Origin: Entomortierella parvispora E1425
Taxonomy: Eukaryota; Fungi; Mortierellomycota
Length of the DNA stretch: 64,000 bases
Reading direction: 5' to 3'
Assembly: GCA_020891255.1 (NCBI GenBank)
Contig: BQFW01000002.1
Span: 3,224,001 to 3,288,000 of the forward strand
The position numbers and the translations under genes are program-made. Under the pieces are notes generated by a model. That model saw only the letters and a list, made by a program, of their open reading frames with translations. It did no database searches and was not told the origin of the DNA. This document shows, one piece after another, positions 52,535-58,000 of the stretch; positions within the stretch are counted from its first letter, which is position 1; every line of letters begins with the position of its first letter.

Positions 52535-54587
52535 TTAATCGGTGGTCTCGCAGAGGGGGCACATGCACTTGAAGCGGTAGTGCTGGAAGAGCTCCTGACG
52601 ACGCTGCTCAGTCGAGAGCGAGCCGTTCTTCTGGTCGATGAATCCAACGTGGAGCTCATCGCCGGCCTTGACGTCTCTTGTGGCGACAACGGCGAGGCTG
52701 TTATTATGGTCCTGGTAGGCAACCTTGGTATTGGGCTCGCAAGAGTGCGACATGTAGGATGTGACTCTGTAGAATCCAGCTCCAACAACGGGGGCATCGT
52801 GGACACTGCGGTACTTCTCAGGGGAAGGCTATTGCCAAAAAAAACAAAAAAAAAAAAAATATTAGGAATAAAAATAATAATAAGAGAATTCATGGTCAAC
52901 ATTTCGCGATCAAGAAAAAAAACAATCACCAAACCAAAACATACCTCGACAGATCGGTTAGCATCCAAAGAGGTCGAGATACCATAGGCGTTGTAGAGCA
53001 ACTTGCCCTTCAAGGTCAAGTAGCGCTCCTCGTTGATGAACTCCTCAATACCGGGGATCTTGGAGCCAAGGGCAACCTTCAACAACTCAATCTCCTGCTC
53101 CTCAGCAGCAGAGGGACGGACCTCCAAGAAGCGGAGGCGCTCAATGTGATCAAACAAGTTGTACTCCTCGCTGCTGACAGTCTCCTCGTGAACCATGCGG
53201 ACCAAGAACTTGGCAATCATCTCTGGGTACTTGTTGTTGGTCTCCTTGGTGTAGTCGTACAACTTGCGCTCGGGTGTTGAGGCATCCTCGGAATCCTTGG
53301 TGCAAAGAACAGCGTGGAACTCGGTCGAGGCAGAACTCTCGCAGGCGGCGGAACAGAAAACAACCTTGGTGCAGTTGGCGCAAGGAACCTTGGTCTCCTC
53401 ATCGACAATCTGCTTCAAGCAGTAGTGGCAGAACTCGTTACCCTCCAATGAAGGCTCCAATGAGCTGATGATAGGGGTCTCGGAATAGATAGTCTCTCCA
53501 GCAGCAAAGTCCTTGGTGGCGATCAATCCACGACGAACAACCTTCTGTCCCTCAGCGGTAACACCCTCGGGCAACTCATCCACCTTGACGTTCATCTCCT
53601 TGGGGGGGAAGACGGTGTAGTATTTCTCCTGCTTCTTGTGGACCTATTGTGTTCAGGAATGTTTTTGCAATCGCTGTCAGTCCTAGGGCTTTCAACACCA
53701 CCATCACGGCTCCTTTTCAATGATTCCAAATGTCTCGTGGCGCCAACTTACATCCATGCTCAACATTCCCATGACGAGGGTGAAAACCTCTGGGGGAATA
53801 GTCTTCTGGTAGACCATGACCAACTCGGCGGGGGCGGGGTAGACCTTCAAGGCCTTGTAGAAGCAGATCGCGGCCATATCGTAACCCTCGGGACCTGATA
53901 CAAAACAAAAAACAAAAGCAATGGGACGAAGGTAAGTCAACATCGTTCCTGGGAAGACTTCAATCTGATCCTTTTTGGCGGGTGAATTTCTCCCGATCAG
54001 AGTTTGGCTCCGGTTTTCGAAGAGAGAAAAGGAGGGAGCCACATCCTTACCTCTGGTGAAGAGGGCTTCACCGGTCGAGAGCTGCTCCATGCAGAACTTC
54101 TCGCGCTCCTCCATACTAGTGGGGAAATCCTCCTCCTTGATACCGGCCAAAGCCTCCTCGACGCTCTGAGCGGTCTTGGTGACCTTCTTCTTCTCCTCGT
54201 CCTTGGCGGCCTTCTGAGCACGCTTCTTCTCCTTCTCTAGAAACGGCGAGGGGTAAGATTGACAAAACCGTATATAATTAGAAACCGAGTAGAGGGTCAC
54301 AGTCCAGTCGTGAACATGGCATGTTCCACCTTCCACAGAGGGCATGCAGCCAATGGGGAAGGGTGAGAATACAGTGGAGCATGTCCGGGGTCTGGTCGGA
54401 CAGGGGTAACAGAAAAAGAGCAAGGAAAAAAACAAGACACAGGGGGGGGGGAATGTCTGGGAGTCGTACTCAGTTTGCGACGGAACTCGGGATCATTTCT
54501 GCGCTTCGAGTCAAAGTAGAGAGCGTATCCAATGGTGGCGATGGCGACGGTGCCAACGGTGGCAGCGACGATGGTCGAAGTCTTCAT
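52535..54587 (-). CDS. TOM20: Tom20 (MAS20) fused to a SMYD-type SET/MYND domain (479 aa)
   Basis: Tom20: anchor plus GYALYFDSKRRNDPEFRRKL and AAICFYKALKVYPAPAELVMVYQKT. Five exons (54587-54470, 54236-54051, 53894-53752, 53643-52945, 52828-52535; 1,440 nt) join it to RRGLIATKDFAAGETI, a MYND finger, SHSCEPN, GDELHVGF and post-SET FKCMCPLC. Confidence 0.85.
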
Positions 54588-55015: not shown

Positions 55016-58000
55016 TCAAGAGACTGTGCTACGAGCAGCTTCATCATAAAGTGCCTCGAACTCAGACCCTCCAGTCCTTTGGGCTTGCATGCGCTGCTGA
55101 ATAGACTGCTGCGAGGCTTGCACTGGGGACTGTGGTGGCTGCTGGGGTGGTTGTTGAGGTGGCTGGGGAGGGGCCATGGGGGAGCTCGAGTTGGGGAATT
55201 GAGCTGGACCGTTACCCATCCTGGGAGAAGACTTGTTGAGGAGAGGTGATCCACGTGGGACCTGCATGGAGGGTGCTGGACCGGGGAGGGCTGGGGGTCC
55301 ATTGGAGAGAGGACCAGAGGACAGAGCAGGCGACGATGGCAAAGACACGTTGGGAAGAGCGGTCTTGGGAGGAGGAAGAGCATCACTAGGGAACTTTGCG
55401 CGAATGGACTCGAACATCAGAACAATCTTGGGCTCGTTGCCGTTGAAGATGTCCTTGACTGTGTATCCATCAGTGGAGATGCCAACTCGATCCATAAACT
55501 TGAACGCTGTCAACAGATTCTCCAGCATCTGGAGAGTATACGTCGCGTTAGGGATCCTCTTGTCGACCTGCTCGCCCGAAAGCTGCTCGATCAGTCTCAC
55601 GAGCACAACTCCAGACCGAAGCGACTGGGTCATGTCAGACACAGGCTCGACGGAAGTGGGCAAGTTGCGGTTGATCCATGCAACATACTTCTCTTGGGTC
55701 TGTTCAAGATGAAAAGACAGTCATTAGTGAGAAAGCACAATGAAGAGAAAAATTCAAATGACCATAGGGTTTTTCCAGAAAAAAAACCTACCCAGGAACC
55801 GTTAGGATCATTTTCCGTTTCCTCGGCATCCTGTCCGAAAGCATCCAACTCGCTATCTGGACGACCGTTCTTGCTTTGTTGTTGTTGCTGCTGGTGGTGT
55901 TGCTGTTGTTGAGACATCACAGGCTGGGACTTTTGCTTGTTGAATCCCTCTCCATCCTCATCTCTCCAAGGATCATCGTCACTGTCCAGTTTTTCCAGTT
56001 TCACAAAGCTGTTGCGTTGTTGTTGACTATTGGGAGCTTGTAATCCCTGTAAGATGGGGCTCTCGGGTAACTGTTGTCCCTGAGAGGGTTGATTCTGCTG
56101 GATAGCGTTAGGGATCGCGCTTTGGTGGACGGGAGGGCGGGGTCCGTCATAGGTGTTTGGGATGTAGTCCTCCGCATCCGATTCCTGGTCATCATAATCT
56201 AAAAGTTGTTGCTGGAATGACTTTTGTTGTTGTTGCTGTTGCTGAGAAGCTGGAGGTGTTGGCAAAGGCTGCGATTGCAATTGCTGTTGGTAGAGAAGGT
56301 CCTGCTGCTGCTGTTGCTGGAGTTGACGCTGTTGCTGATGCTGTTGTTGTTGCTGCTGTGCTTGCTGCATCTGGAAGGACTGGCCATTGGGTCCCAGTGC
56401 TCTTGGTCTCTTGGAAGGGGATGGAGGACGGGGAGCCATCTGTCGGGCGACATGCAGCGAGATCGTGGGGATGTTGCTAGAAGAAATCACGGGCGCGTTC
56501 GGATCACGGCCAATAGTGACCTTCATCAACGCCTTGAGCCAGCCCTTCATATCCGTTTCACTGTCGGTGTAAAAGAAGAAATTACGGAGGCTATCGTGAA
56601 CGGCCTTGAAGCAGTATTTGCCAGCGTAAATGTTCTCGTCCTGAATGATCTTGTAGCCAATCAAATTAATATAGTCCTTGCTAGCCTGATCCTTGGGCGA
56701 GTTCATGTAGTAGAGCGTGACGCCCTTCAGAATAAACCATCGGCTCTTCCAAGTGCGGTACGTGTCTCCGCGTTTCTTGAGCCAGCCCGAAAAGTCTGGC
56801 TTTCCGATCAACTCTAGAGAAACAACCTTATCACTGGGATCTGCCTTTCCATTGCGTTGGCGATTCGTGCTGTCAGGGTTGTGGAACTTGCGTGGCTTGG
56901 GGATGGGTTGTTGGTACGATTCGTTGCCAAAGGAGGAAGCACGCAAATCAGGGCTGGTGGGGCCGATTTGGTCCATAGGTCTTGGATACTGATCTACAGC
57001 TGGCTGACCAAATGGACGTCCTCCATAGAACCCATCATCATAATCGCCAGCGCCAGGACCTCTCTGAGATTGTTGCACCGCTGCCGAACTAGACATCTGA
57101 GTAGGCCGCGTCGTGCTTCCCCACTGATTGCGAGAGGTGTTGGCGGTGGAAGAGTAGGCAGATATGAGGCTCTGGCGATGTGCTCCTCGCAGTTCAGAAT
57201 CAACGTAGGGAACAGGGTAGTCGCCTATGCTTCCGCCGCTTGGAAGTGATCCTAACGTGTCAGAGCGGGCAGCCCGACTTTGCGAGTCATAATCGGATTG
57301 GTGCTGCATTTGCTGGCGCATTGGGGGAGACTGAAGACTAGCAGGCGGCTGTGGTGGAAGCGAAATAGGTGCACTTCTTGGGTCCTGGAATCCCTGGCGA
57401 GGATCGCGCATGTAGTCGTTACGCAAGTCATACGTGGGTGCCCCAGTAGGAATGTTGATGGGGGCCGATGCCATACGGGGAGGGATGTTCGGTCCTTGTC
57501 CCGAGGGATAAATTGGTCCCATTGAGTTGGATAGAGTGCCATATGGGCTCTTGGGTCCCTTGGTGCTTTGTTTCAAGGAAGTGATGGCGTTCATGATGTT
57601 GAACCGCTTTCCGAACGAGTTGATCTCCAATTCCTTTAAGTTGTTCAGATTCAGCTCCAAGAGGATAGCTCCCGAGATCTCGTTATCTACAGTGAAGAAG
57701 GAAAGTCAGTATTGCTGGTCTCTCCTGGCAACTCGATCGTCATTGTGTCATGCTGCTGAATCTTACCGACGAAACTGGGAGCAACGTTGCCAAAGCCGCA
57801 GAATTCAAGCCAGTAAGCAACTTGATCAATGGACCAAAGAGACGGGTGACCAGCCAGCTGGGGATCGCCGAGACTATCCTCTACGCTTCGAGCAATAAGT
57901 TTGCTGTTGGGCGCAGTGCCGGATGTACCATTCCTAATAGAGCCTCCATATCCGCCACGCACTGAGCCTGCAGGAGGGCTGGCGATTGCTGGGTTCTGGT

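What the first reader, a model, noticed from the sequence alone, without database searches (positions are those of the whole stretch)
52535..54587. Tom20 import receptor fused in frame to a SMYD-type SET/MYND domain
Seen: the Tom20 signal anchor and TPR-like receptor core are joined, through a phase-0 GT-AG intron (53644-53751, with a CTGAC branch-like site), to a complete split SET domain containing a MYND zinc finger (CHYC, CANC, CSAAC, HAVLC) and a post-SET CxCxxC. Established: yeast and animal Tom20 end shortly after the receptor core. Inference: a lysine-methyltransferase-fold domain would sit on the cytosolic face of the TOM complex, where it could modify or bind incoming preproteins, TOM subunits or chaperones such as Hsp90, which SMYD proteins bind. 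I recall similar fusions among automatic annotations of basidiomycete and mucoralean proteins but know of no functional study.
Basis: partly seen in the sequence, partly recalled or inferred. Interest (0 to 1): 0.8.

Follow-up and report, generated by a model that had tools for sequence, protein, structure and literature searches.

The report
Tom20 import receptor fused to SET
This soil fungus makes its mitochondrial import receptor Tom20 as one protein with a SMYD-like methyltransferase-type domain. The join is real and old, shared by most fungal groups except the yeast and mould group (Ascomycota), has been noted only in passing in one survey, and its function is untested.

Summary
On the minus strand, five GT-AG exons (54587-52535) encode a 479-aa protein. 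It has a Tom20 signal anchor and a complete MAS20 receptor core, a 16-residue linker, a SET domain split by an intact MYND finger, and a post-SET CxCxxC.

The join is a true fusion, not two neighbouring genes:
- The 48 nt before the internal Met change only at third codon positions between species, and a stop codon closes that frame at the acceptor.
- The junction intron sits at the same phase-0 site in six relatives.
- In Tieghemiomyces one exon spans the junction.
- A spliced, polyadenylated Rhizophagus transcript reads straight through it.

The architecture occurs in Chytridiomycota, Blastocladiomycota, Zoopagomycota, Mucoromycota and Basidiomycota. None was found in Ascomycota. Mortierellomycota have two fused paralogues, and no unfused Tom20 turned up for them.

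The closest solved structures are SMYD3, SMYD1 and SMYD2, but the SMYD C-terminal domain is absent. The whole family lacks the Asn of the NHSC motif. This copy and its clade have Phe where SMYD3 has Tyr239, so its catalytic activity is doubtful.

A 2022 survey lists the family as "Group 25" SET proteins with an upstream MAS20 domain. No functional study was found. This is a new member of a catalogued but uncharacterised family.

The parts
54470..54587 (-). Exon 1: start codon at 54587-54585, N-terminal signal anchor (residues about 4-24, nt 54516-54578), then the basic stretch DSKRRNDPEFRRKL
   Evidence: translation. MAS20 profile positions 1-29, E 1.1e-10. AF2 model of the 95% orthologue has a helix at residues 4-30.
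54237..54469 (-). Intron 1 (233 nt, phase 1, GTACGA..TCTAG)
   Evidence: Same position (after aa 39.33) in six relatives.
54051..54236 (-). Exon 2: charged linker and first half of the Tom20 receptor core
   Evidence: MAS20 profile positions 31-90.
53895..54050 (-). Intron 2 (156 nt, phase 1)
53752..53894 (-). Exon 3: second half of the Tom20 core (CFYKALKVYPAPAELVMVYQKTIPPEVFTLVMGMLSMD), ending where stand-alone fungal Tom20 proteins begin their short tail
   Evidence: MAS20 profile positions 94-131 of 132, E 7.7e-13. Alignment with unfused Tom20.
53644..53751 (-). Intron 3, the junction intron (108 nt, phase 0, GTAAGT..CTGAC..AATAG). If retained, it adds 15 codons and then a stop.
   Evidence: Same position in Gryganskiella, two 'M. 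alpina' genomes, Podila, Jimgerdemannia and Calcarisporiella, with lengths 119, 97, 158, 74, 185 and 62 nt. About 50% aligned identity between species, against 89% for the CDS.
53596..53643 (-). Conserved 16-residue linker VHKKQEKYYTVFPPKE at the start of exon 4, upstream of the internal Met (53593-53595)
   Evidence: Differences from Gryganskiella (5) and 'M. alpina' EC968 (6) are all third-position and synonymous. Y157, F161 and P162 are near-invariant in 54 fusion proteins. A stop codon lies immediately upstream in this frame.
52945..53643 (-). Exon 4: linker, SET N-lobe (RRGLIATKDF), MYND finger and the helical SET-I insert
   Evidence: zf-MYND at residues 72-114 of the exon and SET N-part. 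Match to the SMYD3/SMYD1 N-part.
53302..53430 (-). MYND zinc finger, residues 221-263, with all eight ligands (C221, C224, C237, C240, C246, C250, H259, C263)
52829..52944 (-). Intron 4 (116 nt, 24% GC, T-rich)
52535..52828 (-). Exon 5: SET C-lobe, post-SET and stop codon (52535-52537). The protein ends 4 residues after CxCxxC, so there is no SMYD C-terminal domain.
   Evidence: SET profile positions 61-102, E 5.7e-9. Aligns to SMYD3 residues 192-270.
52730..52750 (-). SHSCEPN (residues 409-415), the counterpart of the SET NHSCxPN motif with Ser in place of Asn
   Evidence: In 54 fusion proteins this position is S, M, A, T, Q or P, and no Asn appears among the residues tallied. The adjacent H, S, C and P are invariant.
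52640..52642 (-). Phe445 codon (TTC) at the position of SMYD3 Tyr239
   Evidence: HMMER alignment to SMYD3. Family tally is Y 29, F 21, W 4. F in 16 of 17 members of the window's Mortierellaceae group, Y in the sister paralogue clade.
52550..52567 (-). Post-SET CMCPLC (C470, C472, C475)

Best explanation
This is one gene for a bifunctional mitochondrial outer-membrane protein. The N-terminal signal anchor and MAS20 core form a complete Tom20 presequence receptor. A short, conserved and probably structured linker joins it directly to a SMYD-like module: a SET domain split by a MYND zinc finger, followed by post-SET, with no C-terminal TPR-like domain. Given Tom20's known N-in(IMS)/C-out topology, the SET-MYND module sits in the cytosol beside the TOM entry site.

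Shown: the gene model, the domain content, and that the join is translated. The fusion is ancient and pan-fungal outside Ascomycota. In Mortierellomycota both paralogues are fused, and no stand-alone Tom20 is on record for them.

Inferred: this protein is a working Tom20 of the organism. The SET-MYND module acts at the mitochondrial surface on or with incoming precursors, TOM subunits or bound chaperones. Because this copy has Phe445 where SMYD3 has Tyr239, and Ser409 for the Asn of NHSC, I think it more likely works as a binding or scaffolding module, or as a weak or altered methyltransferase. The Tyr-bearing paralogue, which relatives have, is the better candidate for an active lysine methyltransferase.
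For: - **Gene model and domains:**
- **Linker is coding:** all 5 and 6 nucleotide differences in the 48-nt linker against two species are synonymous third-position changes. Intron 3 has only about 50% aligned identity, and a stop closes the frame at the acceptor.
- **No alternative start in a relative:** Calcarisporiella has Trp at the internal Met position, so no start codon is there.
- **Conserved junction intron:** it lies at aa 149.0 in seven genomes from three lineages.
- **Single-exon junction:** in Tieghemiomyces, L009:2660-3016 is one open exon spanning the Tom20 end, the linker and the SET start.
- **Transcript evidence:** the Rhizophagus contig L001 (1630 nt, poly(A) end) has five genomic introns removed, the junction intron among them, and carries one 482-aa ORF.
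- **Wide distribution:** an HMM census gave 233 cluster representatives at E<1e-30, with named full-length fusions in five fungal phyla.
- **No unfused Tom20:** none was found for Mortierellomycota, only exon fragments.
- **Structural relatives:** the Tom20 part matches Chaetomium Tom20 of the TOM holo complex (E 2.9e-31; Foldseek). The SET part matches SMYD3, SMYD2 and SMYD1 (E 1e-12; Foldseek E 6e-12).
- **Conserved motifs:** the Zn ligands, Y400, H410-S-C, Y466 and F468 are conserved.
Against: - No RNA data exist for this species, so splicing of intron 3 here is inferred from homology.
- No biochemical data exist for any member of the family.
- The catalytic-site changes (F445, S409) argue against standard SET catalysis in this copy.
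- The absence of an unfused Tom20 rests on protein databases, not on a search of this genome. Mucorales do carry both forms.
- The AF2 model is only moderate (mean pLDDT 69, pTM 0.56), so the relative placement of the domains is not reliable.
Confidence: 0.8

Rival explanations
1. These are two separate adjacent genes, a normal Tom20 ending at the stop inside 'intron 3' (53704-53706) and a SMYD-like gene starting at ATG 53595. On this view only gene predictors fuse them.
For: With intron 3 retained, Tom20 would end after 15 more codons at a normal length of about 164 aa. An ATG lies 16 codons into exon 4. Dentipellis fragilis is annotated that way, as g83 plus g84.
Against: The 48 nt upstream of that ATG evolve as coding sequence in the spliced frame. 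The linker residues are near-invariant across phyla. Only 108 nt would have to hold a terminator and a promoter, whereas flanking intergenic gaps are about 430-600 nt. Calcarisporiella has no Met at that position. Tieghemiomyces has no intron or stop at the junction. The Rhizophagus mRNA is fused. Gene adjacency kept from chytrids to mushrooms would be very unusual for independent genes.
Confidence: 0.04
2. The locus makes several products: the fusion, plus a short classical Tom20 (by intron-3 retention or polyadenylation within the intron) and/or a soluble SET-MYND protein from an internal start at Met166. The fusion would then be only one isoform. This reading is compatible with the main explanation.
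For: The junction intron has been kept at the exact domain boundary in most lineages. Retention gives a stop within 3-57 codons in every species examined. Met166 is kept in 45 of 54 proteins. Mortierellomycota show no separate Tom20.
Against: Stops in a retained intron are expected by chance. Intron lengths are mostly not multiples of three, and the intron sequence is not conserved. No transcript evidence for short forms was seen. The short Rhizophagus proteins in the cluster are exon-level ORF calls from genomic contigs. Tieghemiomyces has no intron to retain.
Confidence: 0.2
3. The SET domain of this copy is a fully active lysine methyltransferase that methylates precursors, TOM subunits or Hsp70/Hsp90 at the import site.
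For: The SET fold, the post-SET Zn site, H410, Y400, Y466 and F468 (counterparts of SMYD3 H206, Y198, Y257 and F259) are conserved. The domain is under clear purifying selection across fungi. From my own knowledge, some active SET/PR enzymes lack the NHSC Asn.
Against: Phe sits at the SMYD3 Tyr239 position. From my own knowledge, Tyr-to-Phe changes at this site are used as inactive SMYD2 and SMYD3 mutants. The position varies Y/F/W across the family. No Asn appears among the residues tallied at the NHSC position.
Confidence: 0.25

Closest known systems
Tom20 (Mas20/MOM19) of Saccharomyces, Neurospora and Chaetomium; animal TOM20
   Same: It has the N-terminal signal anchor, the basic stretch and the full MAS20 receptor core, with the FYKALKVYPxPxEL..YQKT.P motif. 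The best PDB match is Chaetomium thermophilum Tom20 in the TOM holo complex (9i7s_K, E 2.9e-31). Two phase-1 introns lie within the Tom20 part.
   Different: Stand-alone Tom20 ends 15-30 residues after the core. Here a 330-residue SET-MYND module follows instead of the short acidic tail.
SMYD lysine methyltransferases (human SMYD3, SMYD2, SMYD1; yeast Set5/Set6-type proteins)
   Same: The SET domain is split by a MYND finger, followed by a post-SET CxCxxC. The best sequence and fold matches in the PDB are SMYD3, SMYD1 and SMYD2. The eight MYND ligands and the post-SET Zn ligands are present.
   Different: There is no C-terminal TPR-like domain. The module is membrane-anchored through Tom20. 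Asn of NHSC is replaced (Ser here). Phe445 replaces the SMYD3 Tyr239 equivalent in this clade.
'Group 25' fungal SET-domain proteins (J Fungi 2022, PMC9692433)
   Same: [quoted passage not shown] That matches this architecture and the distribution I found.
   Different: The paper gives one descriptive sentence. It makes no link to Tom20 or mitochondrial import, does not test whether the fusion is real, and does not analyse the junction, paralogues or catalytic residues. Membership is judged by architecture, because I did not place the window protein in their tree.
Toxoplasma AKMT (apical complex lysine methyltransferase)
   Same: It is a SMYD-related SET enzyme that acts in the cytoplasm at a specific cellular structure rather than on chromatin. 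It gives weak sequence and fold matches.
   Different: It has no membrane anchor and no receptor domain, and it is only distantly related (E 1.6e-3).

Membership tests
Tom20 / MAS20 (PF02064) | Full-length match to the MAS20 profile above the gathering score | tested here: met
   Exons 1-3 cover profile positions 1-131 of 132. The 95% orthologue scores 152 bits against a cutoff of 27.
Tom20 / MAS20 (PF02064) | N-terminal hydrophobic signal anchor followed by a basic stretch | tested here: met
   Residues 4-24 (TIVAATVGTVAIATIGYALYF) are followed by DSKRRNDPEFRRKLKKEKKR. The AF2 model shows a helix at residues 4-30.
Tom20 / MAS20 (PF02064) | Location in the TOM complex and binding of presequences | not testable with these tools
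   Needs localisation and binding experiments. There is only homology to Chaetomium Tom20 in the TOM holo complex.
SMYD-type SET proteins | SET domain interrupted by a MYND zinc finger with its C4-C2HC ligands | tested here: met
   SET N-part, zf-MYND (25.1 bits, cutoff 22.7) and SET C-part lie in that order. All eight ligands are present.
SMYD-type SET proteins | Post-SET cysteine cluster that completes a Zn site with the Cys of NHSC | tested here: met
   C412, C470, C472 and C475 align with SMYD3 C208, C261, C263 and C266.
SMYD-type SET proteins | C-terminal TPR-like domain (SMYD1-4) | tested here: not met
   The protein ends 4 residues after CxCxxC. SMYD3 aligns only up to residue 270 of 428.
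SMYD-type SET proteins | Catalytic and cofactor residues: Asn-His of NHSC and the invariant Tyr (SMYD3 Tyr239) | tested here: not met
   The window has SHSC and Phe445. Across the family the Asn position is S, M, A, T, Q or P, and the Tyr position is Y 29, F 21, W 4.
SMYD-type SET proteins | SAM-dependent lysine methyltransferase activity | not testable with these tools
   Needs a biochemical assay.
Group 25 fungal SET proteins with MAS20 (PMC9692433) | MAS20 domain upstream of SET in one protein, with the family absent from Ascomycota | tested here: met
   Architecture. Among 89 named hits, the fused ones come from non-ascomycete fungi, and the Ascomycota hits are all unfused Tom20. The paper's statement is quoted.

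The most novel reading that the evidence does not exclude
The ancestral fungal Tom20 was a receptor joined to a SMYD-type methyltransferase, and the textbook short Tom20 of yeast and Neurospora is a derived, trimmed form. In Mortierellomycota, where only fused forms are on record, presequence recognition at the TOM complex would be physically coupled to lysine methylation, or MYND/SET-mediated capture, of precursors, TOM subunits or docked chaperones. The two paralogues would have split into a Tyr-bearing catalytic form and a Phe-bearing binding form.
Probability: 0.25. Interest if true: 0.85.

Novelty: new member of a known kind. Interest (0 to 1): 0.6.

Why it matters
Almost all that is known about Tom20 comes from Ascomycota and animals, where it is a small receptor. 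Outside Ascomycota, most fungal lineages encode a Tom20 welded to a SMYD-like domain. They include arbuscular mycorrhizal fungi, Mortierella, chytrids and many mushrooms. In Mortierellomycota this may be the only Tom20.

If the SET-MYND module is active or binds clients, it would be a new kind of coupling between protein import and protein methylation or chaperone docking at the mitochondrial surface.

The finding also has a practical use for annotation. Public models of this locus are variously split, fused or over-merged, and they are named either 'TOM20' or 'histone-lysine N-methyltransferase SET5'.

Tried and rejected
- **Exon mapper:** my splice-aware mapper worked for seven loci but failed for Clavulina. 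It timed out when widened. I used tblastn instead for Clavulina, Tieghemiomyces and Thoreauomyces.
- **Earlier scan notes:** a word search for Tom20/MAS20 returned nothing. The genome-wide listing showed only unrelated findings, apart from an unchecked species name.
- **Whole-genome search:** I could not search this genome for a second (Tyr-type) paralogue or an unfused Tom20. The claim rests on protein databases.
- **Short TOM20-named proteins:** the short 'TOM20'-named proteins of 69-176 aa in the Rhizophagus cluster looked like possible short isoforms. Those I read (165-176 aa) are SET-part exon ORFs running into an intron, so I rejected them as isoform evidence.
- **Literature:** searches for Tom20 with SET domain, SMYD, MYND or fusion found nothing relevant. 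Only the pair 'MAS20' and 'SET' found the 2022 survey.
- **Cytochrome c idea:** I considered a role like the fungal SET enzyme Ctm1, which methylates apocytochrome c. Nothing supports it, so it is only a speculation.
- **Promoter scan:** the sigma-70 promoter and terminator scan does not apply to a fungus, so I did not use it.
Full report
**1. What is in the sequence**

The region is a minus-strand gene. Five exons join into an open 1440-nt reading frame of 479 codons plus a stop: 54587-54470, 54236-54051, 53894-53752, 53643-52945 and 52828-52535. All four introns are GT..AG.

The junction intron runs from 53751 to 53644.

Pfam results:
- MAS20 (PF02064) lies on exons 1, 2 and 3, covering profile positions 1-29, 31-90 and 94-131 of 132.
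- zf-MYND and the N-part of SET lie on exon 4.
- The C-part of SET lies on exon 5.

The translation shows these features:
- a hydrophobic anchor at residues about 4-24
- the basic stretch that follows it
- the Tom20 core motif
- eight MYND ligands: C221, C224, C237, C240, C246, C250, H259, C263
- SHSCEPN at residues 409-415
- GDELHVGF ending at F445
- the post-SET CMCPLC at residues 470-475
- a stop four residues later

**2. One gene or two?**

If intron 3 were retained, Tom20 would end after 15 more codons, and an ATG lies 16 codons into exon 4. The two-gene reading therefore had to be tested. Five results speak against it.

- **The linker evolves as coding sequence.** The 48 nt of exon 4 upstream of that ATG differ from Gryganskiella at 5 sites and from a 'Mortierella alpina' genome at 6 sites. 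All differences are third-position and synonymous. Intron 3 aligns at only about 50% identity, against 89% for the CDS. In the window a stop codon lies directly upstream of exon 4 in that frame. These codons can therefore only be translated by splicing from exon 3.
- **The linker peptide is conserved across phyla.** Y157, F161, P162 and V168 are nearly invariant in 54 fusion proteins. Calcarisporiella has Trp at the Met position, so it has no start codon there.
- **The junction intron keeps its position.** It sits after residue 149.0 (150.0 in Calcarisporiella, which has one extra residue in exon 1) in the window, Gryganskiella, two 'M. alpina' genomes, Podila, Jimgerdemannia (Endogonales) and Calcarisporiella. 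Its lengths are 108, 119, 97, 158, 74, 185 and 62 nt, mostly not multiples of three.
- **One lineage has no intron at the junction.** In Tieghemiomyces parasiticus (Kickxellomycotina), L009:2660-3016 is one open exon. It reads from the Tom20 core (FYRALKVYPDP...) through the linker into the SET N-lobe.
- **A relative's mRNA is fused.** A 1630-nt assembled contig from a public sequencing run (L001) ends in poly(A). It carries one 482-aa MAS20+SET reading frame and is 96-99% identical to the Rhizophagus irregularis gene. Against the genomic locus L011 it lacks five introns, one of them at the Tom20/SET junction. Exon-level ORFs from genomic Rhizophagus contigs run into one of those introns, which confirms that L001 is spliced.

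A transcriptome-derived protein filed under the plant Anthurium amnicola (P0048) is the same fungal fusion.

The flanking same-strand intergenic gaps here are about 430 and 600 nt. The 108-nt 'gap' would be too short to hold a terminator and a promoter.

I put the two-gene reading at about 4%. Extra isoforms from the same locus cannot be excluded without RNA data.

**3. Distribution**

A profile search of 1.84 billion cluster representatives found 233 with E<1e-30, many covering the whole profile. All named members are fungi:

| Group | Named members |
|---|---|
| Mortierellomycota | about 20 genera |
| Glomeromycotina | Rhizophagus, Funneliformis, Diversispora, Acaulospora, Racocetra, Dentiscutata, Paraglomus, Ambispora, Geosiphon |
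| Mucoromycotina | Jimgerdemannia, Bifiguratus, Calcarisporiella, Absidia, Mucor, Gilbertella, Blakeslea and others |
| Zoopagomycota | Piptocephalis, Syncephalis, Coemansia, Spiromyces, Smittium, Dimargaris, Tieghemiomyces, Basidiobolus |
| Blastocladiomycota | Sorochytrium, Paraphysoderma, Blastocladiella |
| Chytridiomycota | Thoreauomyces, Fimicolochytrium, Entophlyctis, Rhizophlyctis |
| Agaricomycetes | Clavulina, Cantharellus, Tulasnella, Rhizoctonia, Botryobasidium, Hysterangium, Galerina, Pleurotus, Dentipellis |

No ascomycete fusion appeared. Ascomycota and Mucorales supplied the unfused 164-180-aa Tom20 proteins, and Mucorales have both forms.

Within Mortierellomycota a tree shows a well-supported clade of a second paralogue. 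Several species carry one copy of each type.

No full-length unfused Tom20 of Mortierellomycota was found. Everything above 60% identity to the window's Tom20 part is an exon fragment or a partial fusion. The fusion is therefore old, probably dating to early fungi. In this lineage it is most likely the working Tom20. That last step is inference, because I could not search this genome as a whole.

**4. What the parts look like**

The Tom20 half matches Chaetomium thermophilum Tom20 from the TOM holo complex (E 2.9e-31; Foldseek). It ends exactly where stand-alone fungal Tom20 proteins start their short tail.

The SET half matches SMYD3, SMYD1 and SMYD2 best, both in sequence (E 1e-12) and in fold (Foldseek E 6e-12, probability 1.0). 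The model was an AF2 prediction of the 95% orthologue, with mean pLDDT 69 and pTM 0.56.

The alignment to SMYD3 residues 192-270 shows the following:

| SMYD3 residue | Window counterpart | State |
|---|---|---|
| Y198 | Y400 | kept |
| H206 | H410 | kept |
| C208 | C412 | kept |
| Y257 | Y466 | kept |
| F259 | F468 | kept |
| C261, C263, C266 | C470, C472, C475 | kept |
| N205 | S409 | replaced |
| Y239 | F445 | replaced |

Across 54 fusions, no Asn appears among the residues tallied at the N205 position (S, M, A, T, Q, P). The Tyr position is Y in 29, F in 21 and W in 4.

In Mortierellaceae, 16 of the 17 members of the window's group have F. The one exception, Mortierella sp. GBAus27b, has Y. 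The sister paralogue clade has Y throughout.

From my own knowledge, Tyr-to-Phe changes at this site are used as inactive mutants of SMYD2 and SMYD3, so standard catalysis by this copy is doubtful.

There is no SMYD C-terminal TPR-like domain, because the protein stops four residues after the post-SET motif.

The model shows the last Tom20 helix running on to about residue 160, and the first SET strand starts at 168. With the conserved YY..FPP motif, this suggests a short structured connection rather than a floppy tether. This is an inference from a moderate-quality model.

**5. How it most likely works**

*Shown:* a single polypeptide with a complete Tom20 receptor and a complete SMYD-like SET-MYND module, kept under purifying selection across fungi.

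*From established knowledge:* Tom20's topology is N-terminus in the membrane and the bulk in the cytosol. That places the module on the cytosolic face beside the TOM pore.

*Inferred:* the module binds or modifies proteins that come to Tom20, such as precursors, TOM subunits or docked chaperones. For the Phe-type copy in this window I favour a binding or scaffolding role, or an altered weak activity. The Tyr-type paralogue is the better candidate enzyme.

However, the SMYD domain usually linked with that interaction, the C-terminal TPR-like part, is missing.

**6. Comparison with what is known, and novelty**

Database annotators already label these proteins 'MAS20 protein import receptor-domain-containing protein', 'TOM20' or even 'histone-lysine N-methyltransferase SET5'.

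[quoted passage not shown] It makes no mention of Tom20 function or of mitochondria in this context. Searches pairing Tom20 with SET domain, SMYD, MYND or fusion found nothing else.

The window gene is therefore a new member of a catalogued but uncharacterised family.
- evidence that the join is real at the DNA and RNA level
- the conserved junction intron and linker
- the breadth of the distribution
- the paralogue split in Mortierellaceae
- the apparent lack of an unfused Tom20 there
- the catalytic-site differences

**7. Verdict**

Interest is moderate to high. A mitochondrial-import specialist would probably be surprised that most fungal lineages outside the model ascomycetes have a Tom20 carrying a SET domain. 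The question is directly testable. The architecture itself is already in databases and in one paper, and nothing here shows function.

An earlier scan note names the genome Entomortierella parvispora. I did not verify that, but the best hits are Mortierellaceae, with Gryganskiella at 95%.

Noticed in passing
window 55019-57660 (minus strand): The upstream neighbour is a multi-domain protein with SAM, PH and CH domains. This is the same neighbour as in Gryganskiella (L005). In other Mortierellaceae and in Jimgerdemannia the upstream neighbour is ribosomal protein S27e and the downstream one a Ulp1-like Peptidase_C48.
   Followed up: partly
public proteins P0252/P0153 versus P0253; P0027, P0275, P0106, P0248: Public gene models of this family are inconsistent. 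The gene is split into MAS20 and SET genes in Dentipellis fragilis but fused in Dentipellis sp. KUC8613. Elsewhere it is over-merged with S27e, Peptidase_C48, an HSP70 domain or Elp2. Names range from 'TOM20' to 'histone-lysine N-methyltransferase SET5'.
   Followed up: partly
P0052 and P0297 (Gilbertella persicaria), P0109, P0290: Mucorales carry both a stand-alone Tom20 (164-176 aa) and a Tom20-SET fusion. The two Gilbertella proteins lie on contigs of identical length (580188), so possibly on the same contig.
   Followed up: no
window 52829-52944: Intron 4 is unusually AT- and T-rich (24% GC, long T runs) compared with the other introns of the gene (45-52% GC).
   Followed up: no
alignment A1, P0047, P0048 and P0049: In Rhizophagus-type and Clavulina fusions the second Cys pair and the His/Cys of the MYND finger are lost, while the SET parts stay conserved. 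The MYND finger is therefore dispensable in some lineages.
   Followed up: partly
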